The notes below the pieces were generated by a model. That model saw nothing but the letters and a program-made list of their open reading frames with translations, did not search any database and was not told the origin of the DNA. This document shows positions 2,484-22,000 of a stretch of DNA of 64,000 nucleotides, in pieces (the stretch's first letter is position 1; every line of letters begins with the position of its first letter). A program made the translations under genes and the position numbers. This DNA comes from Auanema rhodensis (lineage: Eukaryota > Animalia > Nematoda), in contig OZ059899.1 in NCBI GenBank assembly GCA_964057225.1, positions 15,004,001 to 15,068,000 of the forward strand, in the 5' to 3' direction.

Positions 2484-3072
2484 ATACTTTAAATGTTCCC
2501 ACTTTATAAGGAAACTCATTAAATATTTAAATAGAATTAATTTGAATTTCAACAAATGTAACAGCTTTCACGTATAAGAGTTTTTACCTGATATTCAATA
2601 TATTCAAAACATGCTTCATGAGCTGGGTGTTGCTTCGTGTTATTCCTTTGAATTTGGACTTAAAGGATTATAGCTCAAAGATGTACATATATCATTTCTG
2701 ATATACAAATTGATGCAAAAGGCAGTCTGCTCTTTGTGACTGAAAAAAGATGTAAGAACTAGAAATAGCTAGACACTACAAGCAGAAGAAGTTTTATAAA
2801 GAATCATGATCATGAAATACTGTTGAAGCAATGTATTCATAGAACATCTTCATCAAATCTTTGTCAAAGTACTTTAGAAGCATTGTGTTAAAGAATAGAA
2901 AACGCTTTATTAAACAGGTAAAAACACAAAGAAAAATGATTAAAGTGAATGTATATCAATCGAACGATTTTTTCTCTGGTAGCATGCATGCGGTAATAAT
3001 GTTGGATGGTAATATTGAAAAAATTGAGATTCTAGCTGGATGATTCTGAAGAAACGATAAAGATACAAATAT

Positions 3073-5204
3073 TTATAAACTATTTTTACCTTCCACATCA
3101 GGTACCAAGGACATATCCATGATATATTCTTTTGTAGTTCTTGCAAAATTGCTTACATTATTTTTAAACTCCACGGATTGAATGTAAGAAAATTTCTTCA
3201 GAAGTTTGGCTAATGTCATGATTAGCTTAGCTGAACTATTTGCAGCCTTGTGTGCTTTTGGCTTCATACAATATTCATACTTCTCTTGTGCAATAGTATA
3301 TGTTCTAGTTTCTACTACAGATACATAATAAAAGTGTATCTTATCTTGGAGTTTGCGTACAACTAATAAAAATTCCTCGATTTTGCCGTCAAGAATGTCA
3401 AGTTCCTCAATATTCCGTAGCTGTGACAAGCTGTTTATTTTCATTGCACATAACCTCTTCAAACAAACGGTTTGATTAATTGATTGTTCTAATGCAGCAT
3501 ACATATCGCTTTCATTCAATTTATCCATCAGAAATTGAATTTCTTTAAAGTCCCGAATATTCTGCTTAAGTAGTGTTAGATCTGATGTGAATTTGCAAAA
3601 TTCTTTAAAATACAACTGTTCCGCAAGTAAGGTGGCCCTATCAATCAGCTTTTCGTCCACAAAATCTCCATTCTGTTGTCTGTAGCCTTTTCGACATATG
3701 TTGTTCATAACTGTAGTTATTTGACTAAGTTTGCGAGTGTTGCTCAAGAATGGAACAGCAAAATTTGCATAGTCAACAGCGAGGTTAGAAAGTTTGATAG
3801 CGTGATCAGTAGAAATCTTGATGGCGGGATCATTATGTTTCTCTTCGAGTTCTTCGATTGTTTGCTTGGTAAGTACAGTTGCCGATTGAAAAAGAAGATT
3901 CATATTCTTTATGAAACTGCAAGAATCACAAATACGAACAAAATGTTTATGGACCAACGAAGTTTTTTCCATCAAAAGTTGTTCACAGTTTCGCAGCTGC
4001 GAACAGAGATGCTCCAAGACGTCAATAAATCCTTTAAAGCGTTCTAAAGCGTCAGACACGGTTGTATTTTTGTCGATCTTGTTGAACATGTAGAAGCGTA
4101 CTTGCTCTGTCATTAAATTTATTTGAAAACAGACGTCTAGTACGTCAGAGCCAAAGTAGTGAACAGATGCGTTATCATCCGAGACGATATCGTCGAATGC
4201 ATTACTTATGCTGCTAATCATGTCCATACTGTTTTGTAATGGTTGATATGCCGTATACATATACTTCATTATTTTATCCAGCATAGCTTTTATTTTCTCA
4301 ATCGGAAACTCAGAGTTCAAGCAGCAAATAGAATTAGTATTCATGGAACTAACGGCTATACTAAGCAAATGAAGTGCAACTTCTATATTTTTCGTTGCGC
4401 AATCCATATGATTTGGGTCATTGTGCAGACACCTGGTTCCAGAAATATCAGGAACCGATTGCTCCGCCTTCTCCATACAATCCCACTCGCAGTCTTCCAA
4501 GCTGATATCATGAAGAACACTGAAGGTAATCTTCTTTCCTCCTTTAGTATAATCCGTAGTGTACCATGCATTTTCGTCTTCATCATAGCGTAGATGAGGG
4601 TTGTCGCTTTGATCAATCCAATCAAGATATTTATTTTCTTCAGCAAATTTGAATTCTTCTTCTCCTTTTGTTAATAACAATCTTGTGTATTTGTGATGAT
4701 TTACAGATAGCCAAAAGTCATAATCCTTGAATCGATCTAACGGAACAAGTGCTCGATGATATTTCACTCCAGGTTTCCCATTGGATGGGTCAGCAGATGT
4801 AGTAGGTAAACTATCTTCGGATAGCGTTGTTGTGAAATTTCGTCCTTGCGAGTACACCAACGTACCAGAAATTCGAAGAGGCTATAGAAATGAAAATAAA
4901 TAAATAAAGATAAATATATATTATACAGAGCTTTCATATCTCTTCCTCTTCTTCCACTTTCTGAGACTACAGCTTAGGTTATTAAGTTGGATTTCAAGTT
5001 CGAAAAGCTAGACAAAAATCAAAACGTATGGTTTCAATAACCTTTTCAGAGTTTCATATCTTGAGTCGTCGAAAATCATGGAGATGGGATTCAGGAAAAC
5101 CATGTATATATATTTATTTATATATATTATACTATAGAACTTACTTCTGTTTCTGGTATATCAGTTACATGATAAGCGTACAAAGCTTTAGTGCCTGCCG
5201 GCAT
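3073..5204 (-). CDS. Lineage-specific ~649-aa protein: N-terminal PHYHIP-C-like domain plus long helical C-terminal region (gene B)
   Basis: TTTCAG upstream of ATG 5204. Exons 5204-5145 (MPAGTKALYAYHVTDIPETE, GTAAGT donor), 5007-4927 (less certain) and 4881-3073, in frame with the 595-aa ORF. Domain motifs KYHRALVPLDRFKDYDFWL, LLLTKG, NPHLRYD, WYTTDY and CEWD are shared with the neighbouring gene. Family call is from remembered motif resemblance. Confidence 0.75.
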
Positions 5205-6483
5205 TAGATATTCGAATATTTCTGAAATATAGAAAATTGGAATAAAAAATGAATACGTATTTTAAGAAATATATATAGATATGTAGAATAAGTTGTTATA
5301 TTAGTTAACGAATCAAGTTTTAAATCTACTACGATTGAAACTATTTCGTCTTATTGCGTATTGTAGCAAAAGTTTGTAAGAAATGAGTCAAAATTAGGAT
5401 AAATATAGAAATCGAAATGAAAACATATGAAATCAACTTATTCAATTTATATACATGAACATCTAATATAGACAAGTTCAATTGTATTTGATTTTAATGA
5501 AACTTTAGGATCTTGATATCAAACAATGCTCAGCATTTCTTGGTAAATGAGGTATTGAATGCCAGCAGTTTCATAATTGCTTGGCTGTTTGCTTCATTAC
5601 TTCACATGAGCTATCAATATTTTTATCAATTTCGTAATATTTTTGTGAAGACTATTGATATAGTTAGTAATTGCTATGAATATACGGAACTCAGATAAAT
5701 TGTTTGATAAATAAAGAATTTATACTTCTTTTAATAAGCTATTAGAAAATTATATTTGAAATATATAATAAGAATTTTCATTTTTTCATGTGAGTATCAC
5801 GTTTTTTGATATATTGATTTGAAATTTCATGAATAACAACAATGCAGCTCGAAAAGTTTGATTAAAGCCTTATTTAAACAAAAATGATGACAACGTTCTT
5901 ACTATCTTTAACGATGTAACAAAGTTTATTTGGATTTTGCTTTTATATTATATATTCAATTGCAAAACAATATAATAAAGATTTTAAGACATTACATGAA
6001 CAATGAAATCAAATTGCTTTGTATTTAGCAGCGAATTGTGCCAAAGTAACAGCATTGTTTGTGTACTTTTCGACGATCGCTATGATACTCCTTGTGTATC
6101 TTCACCGGAAATGAATTCTGAACAAGTATTCCGGTGTGTTATTACACGATTTGAAAATATCTTAAGAAGAAGGTACCTTCATACCATCAGAGGAAGCATA
6201 GTTGGTAGTTCAATTTTTCTCGTTCGGTATGAATTAGCCACTATTGTCTCCTGAGTTGGAACATTAGGTGCGTATTGTAAGTTCCTTCCCACAGCCATCT
6301 CTGTAAGAACTGGGAAGAATCGCGAAATTTCAAAATACAATGAAACAATAATTAATATTATTTATTTATATTTATAATTATATCTTTATAGTTTATACAA
6401 TTAATACAAAATGCTCTTACAACGATTTCGGGACAATCATTTGGTCTGAATTTCATAATTAAACCCAAAGGTGGAGGATGCAT

Positions 6484-7707
6484 TTACGAAGTTTCTTCAC
6501 ACTGCTTTACAACAGAATCCCATAGGCAATCATCATCTAATTTAACATTGTGAAATACGAAGAAATTGACGTGTATTCCATTAGTCGAAGAATCATTTGA
6601 ATACCAGGTATCTTCATTAGGATTATAGCGGAGATAAGGATTAATTATCCGATTTAGAGGTTGAATAACATCCAGCTTGGAAGCTTTTTCAAACTCAACC
6701 TCTCCTTTAGTAAGTAGCAACGTGATCCTATCGTCATATGTGGAAAGAAGCCAGAAGTCATAATCCTTGAATCGATGTAATGGAACCAGAACTCGATGGT
6801 ATTTTACTTCATCGGTGCTAGTTGTAACCGAATTCGAAGTAGAAGGTAGATCTCTTGCAGCCATTGACGTAGAGAATAAAATACATATATCTTCTTCTAA
6901 TTGAGTACAAAGTTCGGGTAACTCAGCTTTTTCTAATTGCAATTCTTCGTATTTCGGACAATCCTGAACAGTTTTCAACATGTAAGCATATTCAGTATGT
7001 ATTACCTGGGTTGTTGGTATATTCGTTACATGATAAGCATAACAAACGTTGTAATCTGCCAGTTTGCTGTCAATTTTCATGACTGAATCCCATATGCATT
7101 CTTCATCCAATTCAATATTATGAAGAATAGCCAAGTTTATGATTGTTCCATCTTTATAGAAATCATTGGAATACCATGTATCTTCCTTAAGATCATAACG
7201 AAGATAAGGATTTGCTTCCCTATTAAGTTTTTTCAAAGTAAGCTTTGAAGCTTTCTCTGCTTCTATATCTCCTTTCGTCAGAAGTAAATTCTTGATGAAG
7301 CCACCAGAACAAAGCCATAAGTTATAGTCTTGGAATCGATTCAAAGGGATGAGAATTCTATGATATTTAAATCCAATTTGACCAATTAGAGGATATAAAG
7401 AAGTAAGAGGTATTCGTCCTCCGTGTAATGAAATCGAAAAGAAGGTGCAGGATTCTCCATCTAATTGGGAATATCCTTTGAAGGAGTGTACTATTCGTCC
7501 TTCTAATTTGTTATATTTTGGACAAAGCTAAAAGATATTATTTGAGGAAACTGATTGTAAATCCATGCTACATCTGTGTTTTCAATTAAAACTAACAACA
7601 TTTCAAACTTTGAAGAATAAACTTACTTTTTCTGATTGTCCTAATTGATTTGATGCTGGTATATCAGTTACATAATACGCATATAAAACTTTAGTGTCTA
7701 CAGGCAT
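6484..7707 (-). CDS. Lineage-specific ~374-aa protein with two tandem PHYHIP-C-like domains (gene A)
   Basis: Exon 1 7707-7627 (MPVDTKVLYAYYVTDIPASNQLGQSEK, GTAAGT donor); exon 2 7527-6484 after a TTTTAG acceptor, in frame with the 286-aa ORF. Internal duplication: YAY[YH]VT[DN]IP...CPKY...FS...KYHR.L.PL.RF.DY..WL...LLLTKG...NPYLRY...WYSND...C.WDSV occurs twice. Confidence 0.8.
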
Positions 7708-9378
7708 TATAATTTAACTTTGAATAAGAAAATTCATTTGAATTAAATTAAAAAGATTTTAAAGTTATATGTTATGGAATTAAAATAATTTCTATTGACC
7801 AAAGTTATGACGTGAGTAACTGTGCACAAATCGGCAGAAAAGGCGTGGTCACGCCTGTCTCAGAGCAAATCTTCAAATGTTTATTGATGAATTGGTAATA
7901 GAGAATTGAAAAGGAATTACAAGATATATCTTTTCCTGAACAATAATCTTTTCATAATGCTTTAGTAGATTAATGGAAATTAATTTAAATTATTTAACAT
8001 ATTGACAGATTCTCCTACAACAACTATTTATATAATATTTCTATTAAATTATAAAATACAAATATATAATTTAATTATAAATACTGTAGTTTAATATATT
8101 TTTCTAAATGAATAATTAAAAATGATACTGTATTCATTGTTATTTGTGATGCATAGGCATTCGGTTGTTAATTTTTTAAATTTAATTGATTTTGATATGA
8201 TTTCAAATATTTTCAGAATATTCATGAAGCTGCAAATCAAATGTATTTGCCAAGAAAATCTTCTTCAACTTCAATTAAAGAATGATAATTGAATCAAAGT
8301 ATTCGTTAAGTTTGAATTTTTTTTATTTCATAAAAGTATTTCTGTTTCATTAATTATTCAAGCTTCTAACGTTCATTTTTGGAAACTAGAAGTTACTATA
8401 GAAGAGCTTCAACACCTTGCTTTGATCCTATTAACTCTCATAATCACTTGCTATTTCGTAATTTCTTTTTTTATTTCTTTTATTTGTTTGTATATATACT
8501 TTTTCATTTTTAATTTGAAAAATATAAAAAAATTATAAAAATATATTCATATTTGATAAGTTTTGTGTTATTTCTCATATCTAATATATAAAGACAATTC
8601 AATTAATAATGAATATAAAATATATAATGACATCAAAGAAACACAAAACTTATCTATGAAGAAGAAAAAAACAATTTCTATTTAACATTGAATTGAGAGA
8701 AGCTATGTTGTTAATCATATCATTAAGTTGAAAAAAATGCTCAAATATGTTCTAAATCATCTAAGCCGAGGTTTATAAGACTTTCACTTTACTACATTTC
8801 AAAAGAACTTAAGCTTACATTGCAAAGTAAGCAAAGGCAAGTTGTGAGATGTAGCATATGTTGGTATAGCATGAGCATGATGTTGCTAATGATTATGATA
8901 AACTGTCTAAGAATTGTCTTCTTCTAGCTCTCATTAAGCAGAAAATAGTCGTCATTATAGTTATGTATATGAACGACATTTGCTCTTGATCTATAGCATA
9001 TATAAGGTTTGTTGTCTTTTTTTTCTTTTCTTTTTCAAGTTTTAAAGTTTTTTTTACAAGATTTTTCCAAGAAAAAAATCAAAGTTGCAGCTAATTGTAT
9101 TGAAAAACTGTATTTTTTTGTACGTAAATGTAGACAGAACGACGACAGAAATGTAAAATGAAGATATATAAAGAGTCTGGAGACATTGACGAAGAGAGAG
9201 GAAGAGAGAGGAAGAGAGTGACAATGGCAAATAGACAAGAAATAGAGGGACTGTGAAGCAGCAGATTTCTTGGATCTAGCTGTGGTAAAGTAGCTTAGGA
9301 GGGTGATTTGGGGAAGGGGGCAGGGGGGATATAGTAGTAGTTGTAGTGTAGTTGTTGTATAGAGTAGATATAAGGAAA

Positions 9379-9461
9379 TCAATAGCCAGACAATTCTTGG
9401 AAAGTCTGATCGAGTTCCTCGGAGATGGTCTTGTACCTCTCCTTCTCGTGGACCAATTCGT
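9379..9461 (-). CDS. lev-11: Tropomyosin terminal exon 9c-type ([27 protein letters not shown])
   Basis: TTTTTAG acceptor, 83 nt, phase 1. Confidence 0.95.
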
Positions 9462-12400
9462 CTAAAAATAGTTGAAATTAGAAATAAAATTAATATTATT
9501 ATATTGATTTGATTAACTATATGTAATAGTTAAAGGAGGGATAGATAGAGAAGGGTATTTGCTTGTTTTTCAATGAGTTAGTAGTACGAAAAGGAATGAA
9601 TATCTGTACATATATTGAGGTAAAACTTGAAATTATTAAAGTTTTTTATGAAAAAAAAACAAATAGTATATAATAATGATAAAGTATATTATACATTTAT
9701 ATGTTATATATAACTATATATTCATATATAGTTATATATTTAGAAAAAATGACAGAAAAAGTGAAAATAAGGCTGACTGATGATGTAAAAACACAATGTA
9801 AGCAAGTCAATAATCATCCTGAAATTCCTATTTACTAGGAAAAACAGAGAAGATACAGAAGTAGAAGATGAAGGAATTATCGAAGTTACATCAAACCACG
9901 CAATACAATAATCAGAGTGTTTAGTTAGCTGGAAAGTAGTAGGAGAAACTCGGCACACCGGGGGTGGGGGGAGGGAGGAAAGGTTGTATGGATGATGCTT
10001 GAACAGTTCTTCGTATGAAGCATATCCGTAGTAGCATCTAGCAGTAGACTTCATCTTAACAGCTTTATCATTGAAAATAAAACTTTTAAGATGATTGGAT
10101 TACCGTTAGATGAGATATGAGTCATAGATGAAGAATGTTAAAGAAATATAAAGAGTATCATAACATTGCATTGGCTCTTGCTCCAAGAATTTTTTTGTCA
10201 AAATTTTCCAATTTGCTTGGAAAAAAAAAGATAAATAGGGATTCTGAAGCAGGAGAAGTAGGAAAAACCAGATTAGAAACATTAAATTCACATCATAATT
10301 CGATTAAATAAAACAATTCAAATCAATTAGAGCATTTCAGCTGACTGAATAAAGATTGAAGGTGATGATGATGATGAAAATCTGACGATAGCCAATATTC
10401 TGAAGATTTAGACGACGTTCAATTCGCAAATGAGATGATCCAATTCTTCTTGCAGCTTCTTGCTTTCACGAACAGATGTATCTTTCTCATCTGAAACTCA
10501 CATTCAAACACACGGCAAACATAAGTTTCAAGTTTTTAAAATGCTTTTGCAGTGAAATGCATAAAGATTAGTAAGGGTTGATATGATTAAAAGCTTTAAC
10601 TATGCTATTAGATCGTGCAATTAGAAAATTTATAATTTCGTTTAATGAGAGAAACAATGAAAATTCTATGATTTTCATTGTTATATCTCTAAATTAGTAT
10701 TTGGTTGAGTTTATAACACACAAACACACACAGAATGATCATCTGATTGAACATCATTTGAATCAACTTAACTCATGATGCTTCTAACTTGTAACATCTA
10801 AGCTTTACTACAAGTTCAAGTTATCATCTCATTACATCTCTTCAAAACAGTAAAGATGTGTGAATGAGCAAGATTCAGATGGGTTAGAATCAGAAGACAG
10901 GTAAAGAAGAGAGAAGACACACACACATAACTACGAGGACAAAACCGTTATCTTACATTTATGATCCTTGAATCTCCTGGACGGTTTGCTCAATCTCTTC
11001 CGTAAGATTACGGACACGTTCCTTCTCCAACAACAGCTCGTCTGTACAACACATGGACAATAGACATACACAGACATTTTGATATTTTATTTTCGATTTC
11101 TCTCATCAGGAATGATGTCGTGGTCGTGGTCGTCACCGTTATTACTATGGCATACTTCTGATTCTGATGATATTTTGTCCGAAGGTCTACGGTTGACGTC
11201 TTCCTCTTACACAGACAGATCAGAATACTTTCTAATCAGACGATCGAACAATGACAACGACAATGACATTCAGAATTTTGACGACGACAATCACAACTAA
11301 CACATAACATCAAATGATTTTATTATTCGGTTTTTCTACTTGTACGGCATTTTTACAAAATTATGAAAAATCCGATGTTACACCTCTTCTCAGCTTTGAT
11401 CACATTCCAAGTTTTTGTGGTTCATTTAACGTTTCTCTCAATTAAACTTTGGTTCTCTTTTAATGTTCCAAATTCAAATTTTTATCGAAAGTGTTTGAAA
11501 TCCAGATGCTGTTGCTGGCTTTTTCTTTTTCGCATTCCTCCCACACAGTTAGCAGTCGACAATGAGATGCTTTTCCACGAAATAATTCTCTTCTTCTCCT
11601 TCTCTCTCTCTCTCTCACTCTCTTCTCTTTTTCACGTTTCTCGCTATTGTTTTAGAGAGAGAGAAAGAGATAGAGAGAAAGAGAATGAAAAAGTATAAGA
11701 GATTAAGCTGATGTTTAGTCAGAAGCAACAGCAAGCAAAGCGAATGGAAGTCATCGTTGACTTTAAACTGTGAAAAGCTTCGCAGGGGTGTGTGTGTGGT
11801 ACACACAAAACAAGGCCTGAGAGAGGAAAGTGTAGGAGGATTTGCTCTTACCTCTCACTCTCTCCTGTTATCTTTCCCTCTCTCTCCTTTTCTCTCTCAT
11901 TCTATCAAAATAATGCACAATCTCGAGATAGGTGAGCAATGCTTAGCTGAGATCAGTGAAAAATCGTATCAGAGAAGAAAAACCGAATAATATATGACAG
12001 CAGCTGGTATAATATAAAGCAGCAGCTGCTTTTAAAATTTCTTTAATCGTAATCTTTAACGCATTTTAAGAAAATGTTTGGGTGATGAGCATAAGCTGTG
12101 ATAAGCATTGTTTGTATATAGTTGAATGACGTACCTTCGAGTCTGTCGACTTCCTTTTGGAGCTTCTGGACGGAACGCTCAGCGAATTCAGCACGAGTCT
12201 CAGCCTGGAACAAACATACTGTTAGTCTGATGGCATGTTGGATCAAGAGATTGGAGGTGAATGTGTACAATCGAATGACAACATGTCACAGAAACAAAAT
12301 GCTGAAAGTCAGATGACGTAATGCTCATCTGACTACGAAAGACAACAACGGACGAATTTAGACGACGATGCAAGATTTCTCTTTTCGACACAAGCACAAC

Positions 12401-15400
12401 GACGCAAGAAAATTTGAGAAACGAAAGTAAAAAAAAGGAAAATTCGAAATGAATTAAGGACGATATCATAGACAGAAAACAGAGGGAATGTTACCTCCTT
12501 CAGTCTGGCGGAGATGGTGCGGATTTGCTCCTCGTAAGAATCCTCACGTTGGAGGGCCTTCTCCTCAGAAACTTCGAGAGACTTCAAGTTGTTACCGACG
12601 ACACGGAGTTCCTCCTCGAGTTCGACGATCTTGCTGCACAAAATAGAGACACGTTAATAGAAAGAAAAGAAAAAATCATGAATAATCACATGACCACATA
12701 AGGATATTCACATATTTTTAATTTTTAAGTTTTTTGAAAGGGAGATAGATTAGATAGAAAAAGGTTCATATCATGCAAAGCTTATTCAGAACTGATGTCA
12801 CGATGTTACGACAGCATTACTACATATGCATCCAACTTAATGATTATTAAGATAAACCTGATTATCTTGAAAGCTTATGAATGAGCATGAGCTTCTTGAT
12901 AGTCAAGTTTCGTAATATCATTAAGCTGCATGAGTATGAGAAACCTGATTAACAGCTTGTTTCATAGCCTTCTTATAGGATTCAAAATGCAATTCCACTT
13001 GCGCAGATTTCTTTGCTGAACTTTCCATAATGCGTAACAGCTTGATAAGAGCATTAAGCTCAGTTTCAGCTTCATCAGCTCGTCTGTTAGTAAGTGAAAA
13101 CAAAGTATTTGGTTATATTATATTAATTATTTTAATTTATAGTTAGTTTAGATAATGAGGTATTAGAATCATATAAGGTTTCATATTAGGTTCTTTCAGT
13201 TTTCAGATTTTCCGTTTGGAACCATTTTTCATAGAATTCTTATAATGAATTTAAGTAAGAGTGAAACTGTTTCAATGATTCTATGGAAACGGATCCGGAA
13301 AATGATGACGTAGAGTTGACGACGAAGGAGTTGTTCTATGTATACAGAGGTCGAAGTATACAAGTATGAATTACACGTATTCAGTATTCTACCTCCTTCA
13401 ATCGGAAGTCCAATTGACGAATTTGCTCGGCGAAGATGTCCTCCTTTTCGAGGGCCTTCTCCTCGGACAGCTCGAGCGACTTCAAGTTGTTGCCGACGAC
13501 ACGAAGCTCTTCCTCAAGCTCGACGATCTTGCTAGATAGAACCCAGCCATGTTATAACCGTAGTTTAAGCAATAATCAAAGCCGAAATTCAACGAAAAAT
13601 ATAATCCAAAAAGCAATTTACGAAAGTACAGACTGCTGCGGTCTTATTGATAATAATCTGTTGAATTCCGGTTTTGAAATTTATGTTTTGAGCGCAAATT
13701 CTTTGTTTTTTCTTCTCAACCCCCTGGATTATGATGTGATCTGATGGAATTACTAACTTACTAACCAGGTTGGAGAAGAATCATCAAAAAGCATAATTAT
13801 TATATTATTAGAAGCTATATGGTGAGTAAAGCTTTGAGGTTATGCAAAAGTTTTTTTTCTCATTTTTTCTAAAAATAATTCTTCTTTTCTGCTTAATTGT
13901 TTGATTTGCTTCAATTTTTGTGTGAGATGATAAGACAACGTACTTCTCTCCGGCCTCAGCACGCTCTTCGGCTCTCTCAAGATCAGCTTCAACCATGGCC
14001 AACTTACGGGCGACCTGGAATATTGATGAAGTTAGTTAAAGTATTCTGAATCAACAGTATAGAGCGTCATCATCCGACAACATCAGATGAGAACGTTCAA
14101 TCACTTCAGTCTTTAACGATATGAGACGATATTTCAATGATAGAAACCATTGAAACATTCGAACGATGGACATATATAGATGATGTTAGAATCAAATTCA
14201 AGGCCAGTTATTCAGATTAGAAGATATGATGATTCAAGGATTTTCAATGATGTTAGACATATATGCAACTGTATATGGAGGATCAAAAAGGTTTTTTTGC
14301 TTATAGGTTGGAAGAAGGTTTGATAGATTGGGAGAAGGTTCGTGTTAGGTTAATCACTTCATATCAGTTATGTTCAAATCAGACACAAGAAAATAGGAAA
14401 ATCATTTCGGGACCTCGTCGTATTTGCGGTCAGCTTCTTCAGCGAGCATCTGAGCTTCCTTGAGCTGAGCCTCAATGGTGTTGGCACGCTCCTCATCTTG
14501 GAAGGAGCGGTTTTCCATGACCTTACGGACACTGAACTCACAAAGTTTTTTGGCGAAAAAAGAGAAAAATGGATGAAACGTAACCGGAAATCCTGTTAAG
14601 GATAGCTGGTTTGTATTTAGAATGTGTGAGAGTATGTGATGTATGAGCAGATGTAGATGGAAGAAGATGTGCATATTTGGAATTCTGATATGAAAACTCA
14701 ATATACAGCAGTATCTTCTGAAGTTACTGTCTGATAGCCATCTGATTCTCAAGAATGCTTTGTTTTTTTTAGAAATTTGACTTCGAAATTCAAAAGCAAA
14801 TCGAAATAACATATTCTGGCTTCAAAACAAAAAGTTAAATACATTGAAAACTGACATGAAAATTAGAAAAATCAGATGAAAAAGGAATATTTTTGTTGAA
14901 AAATGGTATTAGTATATAGAGCACAGCACCTCATCACTACGGGTCTCAGTTTCACGTAACAGTGATTGGGATTCACGTAGTTTCTGTTCTAACGCTGATG
15001 AACGATCTTCATCAATGTCCATTCGTGTTTCCAATGATCGTCGAGCCCTAAACACACAAGGAAACAAGTTAGTTATTCATGGTAATTAAGAAGAAAAATC
15101 TTTTTTTTGTTTAGAAAGGGGAACGTAATCGGATTTGAGATGGCTGAGGTATAGCTTCTCGTCATCTGGAGCTGGATCTGAAATGTGGTGAAAAGCAAGC
15201 AAGCACATGCAACTAGGTGTGAGAACATGGAGATTCATGCAGTTCAAACGGATATATCTATGTCTATCGTTGATGTCTTCAATAGTTGAAAAAACAAAGA
15301 AAACTGAAATGAAAACATAAAAAGCGGACCTCTTCGTATTTGCGGTCAGCATCCTCAGCGATAACCTTGGCATCGTCGACTTGAGTTTCTAAGAAGTTGG

Positions 15401-19092: not shown

Positions 19093-22000
19093 ATCAGAAA
19101 CAAAATGTGTAGTTTGAAATCATAACAATAATGATTAAGAGATGATCATCATTCGTTTTTCGAAACATCTCGTGAAAAAAAACGCGAACAAGGAGAAAGG
19201 GGCGGTAGGCGGACGTCCGAAGTACTAATTCACCTGTTGATGATGATGACCATCACTTCTTATTGGACACAACAATAAGAAAGATACAAGATGGTTGACG
19301 ACGTGGAAATAAGCCGATGGAATGAAGAAGAAAGCAAAGCTGAATGAAGGGGATGGAGGAAGAGATTAAAAAACAACTGAAGTTCTTGGAGAACATATAA
19401 CAAGCTATATATGAGAAGAGAGTAAGAAAGCGAGAGAGATAGAGAAAGAAGAATGAAAAAGTTGATAAGCATAATGACTAAAACTGAAAAGGCGGTGTTC
19501 AATGAATTCATCTCAGCTAACGCTCATCAGCAGCTATGGATGCAACTTTTGGCGGTTACATCATGCAATAGCATCAGTTCATACGCATATACCTATAGAA
19601 GATAGCAAAACGATGTGTGCTGAGAGCGTTTGTACCTCGTTCTCTCTCTTTCTCTCATTTCGACTTTCTCTCTATCTCTCTTTCTCTCTCTATCTAGCCA
19701 AGCAAACTAGAATCTCGTCCTCCTCATGGTCAGTAATATGTGCTGGTGATGCTGACAAAAATCAATAATTTGAGATTTTCAAAATACAAAGAAAGAGAAA
19801 AGGAAGTTTCAAGGGATAGATTATCAATTAAAGGTCCAAATAAAAGATAAAAATGAAAAGAAATCAAATTCGAAGATTCACGTTTTTGAATTCGGTACAG
19901 AAGGTAGCGATTACATTGCTAATACTAAACTTTGATCCATCTGAATGATCGGAAGTGTGTGGGAAAAGCGGGGGTGGATTGGGGAAGAAGAAGAAGATAG
20001 AAGAAGTAGTTTTTTGAAAAAGGTTATATATAGGGAATTATGATACATGATTGAGTTATGATGAGTAAATGACATAGTGAATGCTCATGATGATGATGAC
20101 ATTTGCTTGTTTCAGATGATGATGATGATGATGATGATGCTAAGATTGAATTGTGAGTCAACTAACAGAGAAATGAAACAAGAGCAAGATTGGAAACATA
20201 GTTATGATGTTTGGGGATGAAGTGAACAGATGTATGTAGGGAGAGGGGGGGGAGAGAGAGGAAATACACAAAAGTCAGTCTAATTAGTTACAAAAGGAAT
20301 CAAAAGGAATGATTGAGGACAAGGTTCCGGTAGGATGACCCTGTATAGAGAGAAGAATCAAAAGAATGGTCCATCGTTTTGTTTTACTTATCCCCTCTTT
20401 TCACTTTTCAGAAATCATAATTTCAATAAACTTTACGGAATGTTGGGTGTTCGTGTGAAATTTCTTGATCAGCTTGGACCATGCGTTTACTAACGCACAG
20501 GGAGATGGCGGAGGACGCTGGGAAGGATGAGATACAAGAAGCATGTTTAAGTTGATCGGAAGGATGCTTATGAATGGGACGATATGAAAGAAAAATGTGC
20601 AAGTATATGCATCTAGCGATGTTGATGGAGAACTGTCCACGGCAGCGATTGCAGCTATCGTCGACGACGAAAACGCCGAAAGCTGATGATGCACAGCATG
20701 ACGAGGCAGTTTCATCGTCAATCGTTTCCACATTCTTCAGGAAAATATGGAAAACCGTATCTTGAGCATGATGGCAAGGAAAGGGAAGCAAAATAGGAAA
20801 AGGGAGGTATGAAAGTATTGAAATATCAGATACATTGAGAAGAATTACGAATGATAATGAAGAGGCAAAAGCTTTTTAGGTAACATTTTTGAATATAATG
20901 ATGAAGATATAGTGATATTATTGATTGGATGACAACTGAAGATCAGAGACTTTATGAAGGAATTCCGAAGAGATAGGTGATGTAGATGATATAGTCAGAT
21001 ATATATGAAGAAAGAGAGAGCGAAAGAGAGAGAGGGGGGGGGGGAGAAACGGAATGTATTCTTAGACGAAGTATATGATGACGTAGTTTATATGCCGTCG
21101 TACATATTTAGCAGATTCAACAAATAAAAGGTGTATCTCATATATGTAACTACCTGTATTATAAAAAGTAAAGAGGTATACATTGAGAGAGAAAGGGAGA
21201 CTAAGAGATATAATGGAGGGAAATAGATAGAAACGAGTTTGATCATCAGCTGCTTATCTAATATTATGAAGTTGTTGTCAGATTAAATCTGATTCATATC
21301 ATATCCTTTTAGCTTCATGTTGCGTAAATATCTATTTTGAAAAGGTGATGATGATTGTTGTTGTTCAATCATCATTCTATTCATTCGAATTTAATTCCTT
21401 TCTTCCGTTAAAATTTCTTTTTTTATTTTGAAAAAAAGGAAAAATGTAATTTCTATTGATAATGAAACATACGTCAATTGATGATGATGGGATTTTGATA
21501 ATAGGAGAAGAAGTAACAATGTACAACCGCTCAACTGCATTTCAGAAATAAGGATGAATGAATGAAAATATTCCAATTTCACGTGCCACGTGGAAATATA
21601 TTTTCATTTAGGACACTCAGATTGTATGAGATAGTAATGAAGGAGAAGAGAGAAAGAGACGGGGGTAAGATGGCATATCATCGTATGAAGATGTTAGGAT
21701 TTTGATAAATTCTGAAGCATTGTGGATACATTGTGATCGTGAAATGCATGATGACGTAATAATCCCTTAAAGTTATTTTTGAAATTATTCTAGCCATCGA
21801 AAACAATATATATATATATATATATGTATATATTTGAAATAGGAATAGAACATCACTTCTGGGGCCAACACCAAGCTGGCAACCCGAATGACCATCCGAC
21901 AACTACCATATATGCCAGCAAGGACAGATACAGGAAACCGGACAGCAGGAGAAGACTATTCGAACAACAAAAATCTAATGGATACCGATGATGATTCGGA

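What the first reader, a model, noticed from the sequence alone, without database searches (positions are those of the whole stretch)
12945..13083. Hidden third mutually exclusive exon 7 of tropomyosin, highly divergent
Seen: between exons 7a and 7b lies a segment of exactly the same length (139 nt) and phase, with TTACTAACAG acceptor and CAG|GT donor, encoding [46 protein letters not shown]. Only 11/46 residues match 7b, yet in tropomyosin numbering (189-234) the a/d core is A190 A193 L197 L200 L204 M207 A211 S214 E218 F221 K225 M228 V232, so the heptad and the hallmark core E218 are kept. Net charge moves from about -4 to +1. To my knowledge C. elegans lev-11 has only 7a and 7b. Inference: an undescribed isoform with altered actin, troponin or myosin contacts that homology annotation would miss.
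Basis: partly seen in the sequence, partly recalled or inferred. Interest (0 to 1): 0.85.

Follow-up and report, generated by a model that had tools for sequence, protein, structure and literature searches.

The report
Tropomyosin exon 7c in another nematode
The segment is very probably a real third alternative exon 7 of this worm's tropomyosin gene, but the same kind of exon (7c) was described in C. elegans in 2023; the small new point is that this exon is old and widespread in nematodes and changes unusually fast.

Summary
On the minus strand, 13083-12945 is a 139-nt open segment in the same phase as exons 7a (13531-13393) and 7b (12633-12495). It has AG/GT borders, 11/46 in-register identity to 7b, a kept heptad and E218, and net charge +1 against -4.

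The novelty claim fails. Ono et al. 2023 (PMC10512467) described C. elegans lev-11 exon 7c and its isoform LEV-11U, which binds actin poorly and is used about 1/5000 as often as 7b.

The window is not C. elegans, because the paper's genotyping primers mismatch. I fetched tropomyosin loci of other nematodes. C. auriculariae, Necator, Angiostrongylus, Toxocara and an unnamed soil nematode each have a 139-nt in-phase third exon 7: between 7a and 7b in the first four, upstream of 7b in Toxocara, which has no 7a. Ascaris has a protein record with such an exon between exons 6 and 8. These exons all begin with A or G (K188, where 7a/7b give N188), keep the heptad and are less acidic. The window's exon scores with this family, not with 7a/7b.

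RNA contigs of this species confirm the 7a and 7b junctions. They show only intron-level cover and no junction for 7c, so its splicing here is not shown.

Verdict: an orthologue of a known kind of exon, of modest interest.

The parts
13944..14014 (-). Exon 6 of the tropomyosin (lev-11 orthologue) gene. It ends with the first two bases (AA) of the split codon 188.
   Evidence: Sequence. RNA joint 12633|13944, and loose ends at 13944 and 14016. Translation ...AEERAEAGE.
13393..13531 (-). Exon 7a, 139 nt. First base is C (N188).
   Evidence: RNA joint 12203|13392 to exon 8, and a loose end at 13531 carrying the end of exon 6. Depth is about 50-420, against 3000-10000 for 7b.
13084..13094 (-). Acceptor region cttACTAACAG of the middle exon. 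The same ACTAACAG precedes the middle exon of C. auriculariae (L081).
12945..13083 (-). The finding: the middle exon 7 (7c type). It is 139 nt, in phase and open, with first base A (K188). It is followed by a GT donor (CAG|gtttct).
   Evidence: RNA contigs cover it only at depth 2.7-4.8 and run on into the flanking intron, with no joint.
12495..12633 (-). Exon 7b, 139 nt, the major form. First base is C (N188).
   Evidence: RNA joints 12203|12494 (three runs) and 12633|13944.
12135..12204 (-). Exon 8, shared by all forms.
   Evidence: (C. elegans reverse primer matches with 2 mismatches at 12149-12171).

Best explanation
The segment is this nematode's copy of the third alternative exon 7 of tropomyosin, the kind named exon 7c in C. 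elegans lev-11.

Like 7a and 7b it is 139 nt long and in the same phase. Choosing exactly one of the three keeps the reading frame. Joining two of them, or skipping all three, shifts the frame and gives early stops.

Splicing exon 6 to it and it to exon 8 replaces residues 188-234 of the coiled coil. The replacement keeps the heptad core and the core glutamate E218, but it has lost most of the conserved acidic surface residues (net charge +1 instead of -4).

By analogy with C. elegans LEV-11U, the product should be a rare tropomyosin isoform with weak affinity for actin filaments. The analogy is an inference for this species.

Shown here: the anatomy of the exon, its homology to middle exons of other nematodes, and transcription of the region as pre-mRNA.

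Inferred: that it is spliced in and translated in this species, and what the isoform does.
For: Anatomy and in-register similarity to 7a/7b.

Frame logic.

A 139-nt in-phase open AG..GT exon lies between 7a and 7b in C. auriculariae (L081 20671-20809), Angiostrongylus (L082 12110-12248), Necator (L083 12888-13026) and an unnamed soil nematode (L008 1322-1460). In Toxocara it lies upstream of 7b (L084 7469-7607).

All of these exons begin with A or G (K188), while all 7a/7b exons begin with C.

The window exon shares 15/46 residues with the Necator exon. Seven of these are not in its own 7a/7b (R189, A190, A193, A199, R205, H220, A227; permutation p = 0.02).

A profile built from the other middle exons scores the window exon at 10.5 bits, against 1.9 bits for the 7a/7b profile.

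The tree splits all middle exons from all 7a+7b exons at 100/100 support.

Every middle exon keeps 10-11 of 13 core positions hydrophobic in the right register, and has net charge -2 to +1 against -4/-5.

Between Necator and Angiostrongylus the middle exon has pN 0.157 against pS 0.719, which indicates purifying selection.

Ascaris suum protein F1KVZ5 (P0002) has this exon type joined cleanly between exons 6 and 8.

The C. elegans E7c residues named in the paper (K160 = K188, R177 = R205, E190 = E218) are matched here.

C. elegans E7c is a cloned cDNA exon with a mutant phenotype.
Against: No joint or loose end at 13083 or 12945 appeared in four RNA runs. The contigs over the exon have intron-like depth and continue into the intron. 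However, contigs drop rare forms, and C. elegans uses 7c only about 1/5000 as often as 7b.

The exon is extremely diverged: 8/46 identity to the C. auriculariae exon, and two of the five residues quoted for C. elegans E7c differ (N198 not R, K213 not Q). The 188-198 stretch is net negative here but strongly positive in C. elegans.

GC content is 0.39 against 0.53 in 7a/7b, and the donor GTTTCT is weak.

The middle exon is absent from the 7a-7b interval of a fairly close relative (L002) and of Heterodera, so lineages can lose it.

I could not obtain the C. elegans E7c sequence itself with these tools.
Confidence: 0.75

Rival explanations
1. It is a decaying relic. The middle exon was functional in the ancestor but is no longer used in this lineage. 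It drifts, and it is still open only because too little time has passed or by luck.
For: Very high divergence from every other middle exon, with nucleotide identity 0.28-0.47. Lower GC than 7a/7b and a weak donor. No junction in RNA contigs. The exon has been lost in L002 and Heterodera.
Against: After saturating divergence the segment still has exactly 139 nt, AG and GT borders, no stop (2.7% expected from its own composition), the heptad in the right register (p = 0.006), E218 and K188. The equally diverged C. auriculariae exon shows the same set of features. The flanking introns share nothing detectable with other species.
Confidence: 0.13
2. It is used, but mainly at the RNA level. It would act as a regulatory exon whose inclusion together with 7a or 7b sends transcripts to nonsense-mediated decay, and its protein product would be unimportant.
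For: Inclusion together with 7a or 7b gives early stops. Usage is very rare in C. elegans. In run X1 the contig over the exon ends 2 nt upstream of the acceptor (13085). That is where an unspliced form and a 7a-joined form (7a ends in AG) would part. This is only a hint.
Against: A purely regulatory exon does not need an open frame, a heptad or E218, yet these are kept in all species examined. C. elegans cDNA clones carry 7c alone, in frame.
Confidence: 0.08
3. It is a chance open reading frame in an intron, unrelated to tropomyosin exons.
For: A 139-nt in-phase AG..GT open segment arises in about 3% of simulated introns of this size.
Against: In-register identity to 7b (p = 0.001), heptad register (p = 0.006) and family profile score. 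The same slot is occupied in at least six other nematodes, and the tree split is 100/100.
Confidence: 0.02

Closest known systems
C. elegans lev-11 exon 7c (E7c), isoform LEV-11U, GenBank OQ473578 (Ono et al. 2023, PMC10512467)
   Same: It is a third alternative exon 7 encoding 47 residues including the split codon, with only about 17-24% identity to 7a/7b. The first residue is K, R is at 205, E218 is kept at a core position, and many conserved acidic residues are lost. In this window 4 of the 8 basic residues of 7b are not kept, the same count the paper gives for E7c.
   Different: It is in a different species and has a different sequence (N198 and K213 here; R and Q in C. elegans). The 188-198 stretch is net negative here, whereas C. 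elegans has a strong positive patch there. Splicing, weak actin binding and a phenotype are shown only for C. elegans. I could not compare the sequences directly.
Middle exon 7 of other nematode tropomyosin genes: Necator L083 12888-13026, Angiostrongylus L082 12110-12248, C. auriculariae L081 20671-20809, Toxocara L084 7469-7607, Ascaris F1KVZ5, Steinernema models P0008-P0010
   Same: Same slot, 139 nt, same phase, K188, heptad and E218 kept, less acidic than 7a/7b. The window exon and the C. auriculariae exon share an ACTAACAG acceptor.
   Different: The ascarid, Steinernema and strongylid versions still resemble 7a/7b (17-25 of 46 residues) and each other (up to 45/46). The window version is far more diverged (8-15/46). 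As far as the papers searched show, these exons are not described in the literature.
lev-11 exons 7a and 7b (Barnes et al. 2018, PMC5921574)
   Same: Same gene cluster, 139 nt, mutually exclusive, encoding residues 188-234.
   Different: 7a and 7b are 78% identical to each other and nearly invariant across nematodes, with N188 and net charge -4/-5. They bind actin and serve the head and body muscle. The middle exon evolves many times faster.
Vertebrate TPM exons 6a/6b (from general knowledge)
   Same: Mutually exclusive exons starting at about the same residue (189) and changing the actin-binding period 5/6 surface.
   Different: They are shorter (residues 189-213), both versions are well conserved, and both products bind actin.

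Membership tests
Nematode tropomyosin exon 7c (C. elegans lev-11 E7c) | 139-nt exon in the same phase as 7a/7b, inside the exon 7 cluster between exons 6 and 8 | tested here: met
Nematode tropomyosin exon 7c (C. elegans lev-11 E7c) | Low identity to 7a/7b (paper: 17-19%) with the core E218 (E190 in the short isoform) kept | tested here: met
   10/46 and 11/46 identity, with E218 present. Paper values.
Nematode tropomyosin exon 7c (C. elegans lev-11 E7c) | Residues the paper names for E7c: K160 (188), R170 (198), R177 (205), Q185 (213), and a positive patch over 188-198 | tested here: inconclusive
   K188 and R205 are met. N198 and K213 are not, and the 188-198 stretch is net negative. This fits a diverged orthologue, not an identical exon.
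Nematode tropomyosin exon 7c (C. elegans lev-11 E7c) | Direct sequence homology and same intron position as C. elegans E7c | not testable with these tools
   The E7c sequence appears only in a figure and in GenBank, and no C. elegans locus could be fetched. Indirect support comes from the paper's 851-bp amplicon with a cut at 346 bp, which fits an exon between 7a and 7b when laid on the C. auriculariae spacing.
Nematode tropomyosin exon 7c (C. elegans lev-11 E7c) | Spliced into mRNA as the only exon 7 | tested here: inconclusive
   Four RNA runs (contigs only) show the 6-7a, 6-7b, 7a-8 and 7b-8 junctions but none for the middle exon.
Nematode tropomyosin exon 7c (C. elegans lev-11 E7c) | Product binds actin filaments poorly | not testable with these tools
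   This needs co-sedimentation. Only the loss of acidic surface residues is seen here.
Middle exon 7 family of nematode tropomyosin genes (defined here) | Lies between 7a and 7b, first base A/G (K188), heptad kept, less acidic, and scores with the family profile rather than the 7a/7b profile | tested here: met
   10.5 against 1.9 bits; 100/100 split, with a long-branch caveat.

The most novel reading that the evidence does not exclude
The 7c-type exon is not a C. elegans oddity. It is an ancient alternative exon 7 shared by ascarids, Steinernema, strongylids and rhabditids, and it is older than the 7a/7b split (ascarids have it but no 7a, and 7a nests beside 7b in the tree). For that whole time it has kept its length, phase, K188, heptad, E218 and lowered acidity. 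Its surface residues turn over fast, extremely so in the Caenorhabditis and window lineages. That would argue for a conserved need for a weakly actin-binding tropomyosin. The papers searched do not discuss this.
Probability: 0.55. Interest if true: 0.5.

Novelty: new member of a known kind. Interest (0 to 1): 0.35.

Why it matters
For this genome, the result adds a probable coding exon and isoform that homology-based annotation would miss.

More broadly, the function of C. elegans LEV-11U is an open question: it is a tropomyosin that hardly binds actin, yet mutating its exon reduces motility and brood size. The same exon is kept open, in register and under purifying selection across distant nematodes, while its surface changes quickly. 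This argues that the isoform is used, and it identifies the few constrained positions (K188, the a/d core, E218, R205, H220) as targets for experiments.

Tried and rejected
- **Peptide search of protein representatives.** The 46-aa peptide searched against 1.84 billion representatives gave only an unrelated repeat protein (P0001).
- **ORF search.** The 60-aa ORF in the search for homologous proteins found nothing. The length filter makes this blank uninformative.
- **C. elegans primers.** The paper's genotyping primers showed that the window is not C. elegans and that none of the 80 metagenome loci is either.
- **Exact look-up of cDNA proteins.** Seven metatranscriptome tropomyosin ORFs were not in the collection.
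- **Canonical tropomyosins.** The homology searches did not list canonical 284-aa nematode tropomyosins, so no C. elegans or close Caenorhabditis locus could be fetched.
- **Loci that could not be fetched or used.** Steinernema and Trichinella models were not on record for locus retrieval. The Nippostrongylus locus (L085) gave no tblastn match to exons 6, 7 or 8.
- **Supplements.** No supplementary files of the two key papers are held as text.
- **Intron comparison.** Nucleotide comparison of the 7a-7b interval with other species found nothing. Divergence is saturated, so dN/dS for the window exon itself is not meaningful.
- **Chance ORF.** Considered and rejected; see the rival explanations.

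Full report
**1. Observation**

The tropomyosin gene lies on the minus strand. Exon 6 ends at 13944 with AA, the first two bases of codon 188. Three 139-nt segments follow: 13531-13393 (7a), 13083-12945 (the finding) and 12633-12495 (7b). Exon 8 starts at 12204.

The candidate is preceded by cttactaacAG and followed by GTttct. Its first base, A, completes the split codon as AAA (K). The other two frames contain stops.

- Identity to 7b is 11/46 and to 7a 10/46. In-register identity is the highest of all shifts from -14 to +14 (7 or fewer elsewhere), with permutation p = 0.001.
- In tropomyosin numbering, 10 of the 13 a/d positions are hydrophobic (p = 0.006) and E218 is kept.
- Net charge is +1, against -4 for 7b and -5 for 7a.
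- A 139-nt in-phase AG..GT open segment appears in 3.1% of simulated 760-nt introns.
- 46 codons of this composition stay open in 2.7% of shuffles.

**2. It is already a known kind of exon**

Ono et al. 2023 (PMC10512467) cloned a C. elegans lev-11 cDNA, LEV-11U (GenBank OQ473578), which carries a third alternative exon 7 named E7c.

- E7c encodes 47 residues and is 17.0% and 19.2% identical to 7a and 7b.
- It keeps E190 (= E218) and has lost four conserved basic and nine conserved acidic residues.
- Its product binds F-actin poorly.
- WormBase RNA-seq shows it used about 1/5000 as often as 7b.
- A stop cassette in the exon mildly lowers motility and brood size.
- A 2024 preprint counts seven lev-11 isoforms, including U.

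**3. The window is not C. elegans**

The paper's forward genotyping primer has no match within 3 mismatches. The reverse primer matches exon 8 with 2 mismatches. Unchecked notes of this scan place the genome outside Caenorhabditis. I did not determine the species.

**4. RNA evidence in this species**

Four runs of one study hold the exon. Laid on 12000-14100, they behave as RNA: exons 6, 7b and 8 have depth 3000-10000, 7a has 50-420, and introns have 0-9.

Joints or loose ends prove the 6-7b, 7b-8, 7a-8 and 6-7a junctions. None touches 13083 or 12945.

The candidate is covered only by low-depth contigs that run on into the intron:
- X1: 12861-13085, depth 4.8
- X3: 12929-13079, depth 2.7
- X4: 12975-13252, depth 3.8
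- X2: one unspliced contig, 12604-13531

The region is therefore transcribed as pre-mRNA. Splicing of the exon is neither shown nor excluded, because contigs drop rare forms and the expected usage is tiny.

**5. Relatives**

Peptide-only database searches were blank or spurious. I used an alignment of 7a and 7b (A1) to scan metagenome contigs. This returned many full-length nematode tropomyosin cDNAs and three genomic contigs.

One genomic contig, L008 (with L005 as a variant), has a 139-nt in-phase exon at 1322-1460, between its 7a and 7b.

A cDNA ORF used as a reference query then found over-long gene models:
- Ascaris suum F1KVZ5 (P0002) reads exon 6, then K, then an exon of the "AREMEREL...RENSF" type, then exon 8.
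- Steinernema models (P0008-P0010) carry 7a, a similar exon and 7b, in that order.

Fetching genomic loci and scanning them gave this picture:

| Species | Locus | Third exon 7 (139 nt, open, in phase, AG..GT) | Position |
|---|---|---|---|
| C. auriculariae | L081 | 20671-20809 | between 7a and 7b |
| Angiostrongylus cantonensis | L082 | 12110-12248 | between 7a and 7b |
| Necator americanus | L083 | 12888-13026 | between 7a and 7b |
| Toxocara canis | L084 | 7469-7607 | upstream of 7b; no 7a-type exon |
| Unnamed relative | L002 | none found | 371-nt 7a-7b interval |
| Heterodera | L086 | none found | |

**6. Does the window exon belong to this family?**

- Every middle exon starts with A or G, giving K188, and every 7a/7b starts with C, giving N188. 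The paper's K160 says the same for C. elegans E7c.
- The window exon shares 15/46 residues with the Necator exon and 14/46 with the Angiostrongylus exon, more than with its own 7a/7b. Seven of the matches to Necator are residues absent from 7a/7b: R189, A190, A193, A199, R205, H220 and A227 (p = 0.02).
- R205 is also the residue quoted for C. elegans E7c (R177).
- A profile of the middle exons, built without the window and C. auriculariae sequences, scores the window exon at 10.5 bits against 1.9 bits for a 7a/7b profile. C. auriculariae scores 12.5 against 0.4.
- A maximum-likelihood tree separates all middle exons from all 7a+7b exons at 100/100 support, with 7a nested beside 7b. The window and C. 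auriculariae branches are very long, so this split mainly shows that they are not 7a/7b-like.
- All middle exons keep 10-11 of 13 hydrophobic core positions in the correct register and E218, and they have net charge -2 to +1.
- Between Necator and Angiostrongylus the middle exon has pN 0.157 against pS 0.719. This indicates purifying selection, but with about four times the amino-acid change rate of 7a.
- The window and C. auriculariae exons share the unusual acceptor ACTAACAG.

Points against simple identity with C. elegans E7c: N198 and K213 here against R and Q there, and a net negative 188-198 stretch where C. elegans has a positive patch. The window exon also shares only 8/46 residues with the C. 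auriculariae exon. In these lineages the exon changes extremely fast.

**7. Mechanism**

139 is not a multiple of 3. Including two of the three exons, or none, shifts the frame and gives early stops. This is the usual way mutual exclusivity is enforced. The decay of such transcripts is inferred, not tested.

With the middle exon alone the frame is kept. Residues 188-234, which cover the second half of actin-binding period 5 and part of period 6, are replaced by a coiled-coil segment with a conserved core and a much less acidic surface. By analogy with LEV-11U, the product should bind actin weakly. Its cellular role is unknown even in C. elegans.

**8. Rivals**

- A decaying relic: 0.13.
- A mainly regulatory exon that triggers decay of transcripts: 0.08.
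- A chance ORF: 0.02.

The kept frame, length, splice sites, heptad, K188 and E218 after saturating divergence speak against the first and third. Loss of the exon in L002 and Heterodera shows that loss is possible.

**9. Novelty and score**

The kind of exon is known (2023), and this is an orthologue in another species. The papers searched do not report the wide and old distribution of this exon in nematodes or its fast-changing surface. I score interest at 0.35.

Noticed in passing
L084 6530-8614 (Toxocara canis); P0002 (Ascaris suum): Ascarids seem to have only two exon 7 versions, the middle (7c) type and 7b, with no 7a-type exon. With 7a nesting beside 7b in the tree, this suggests the 7c type is older than the 7a/7b duplication.
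   Followed up: partly
L002 1570-1940; L086 19326-19919: The 7a-7b interval of a fairly close relative (metagenome contig L002, 83-85% exon nucleotide identity to the window) and of Heterodera trifolii holds no middle exon. The exon has therefore been lost, or never gained, in some lineages.
   Followed up: partly
L086 19245-19325 and 19535-19609: In Heterodera trifolii the 7a-type exon appears split into two pieces by an extra intron.
   Followed up: no
window 12861-13085 (run X1): The low-depth RNA contig over the candidate ends 2 nt upstream of the acceptor, and nothing is covered further upstream in that run. Since 7a ends in AG, this is where an unspliced form and a 7a-joined form would part. 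It may equally be a coverage accident.
   Followed up: no
window 16295-15990, 15447-14414, 11042-9382 (minus strand): The other alternative exon sets typical of lev-11 are all present: two exon 4 versions, three 118-nt exon 5 versions (15447-15330, 15047-14930, 14531-14414) and at least three last-exon versions (about 11042-10965, 10497-10411, 9462-9382).
   Followed up: no
(database behaviour): Searches with a full-length nematode tropomyosin returned mostly over-long gene models that string mutually exclusive exons together, and did not list the canonical 284-aa nematode proteins. Such mis-joined models were useful here because they reveal hidden alternative exons.
   Followed up: no
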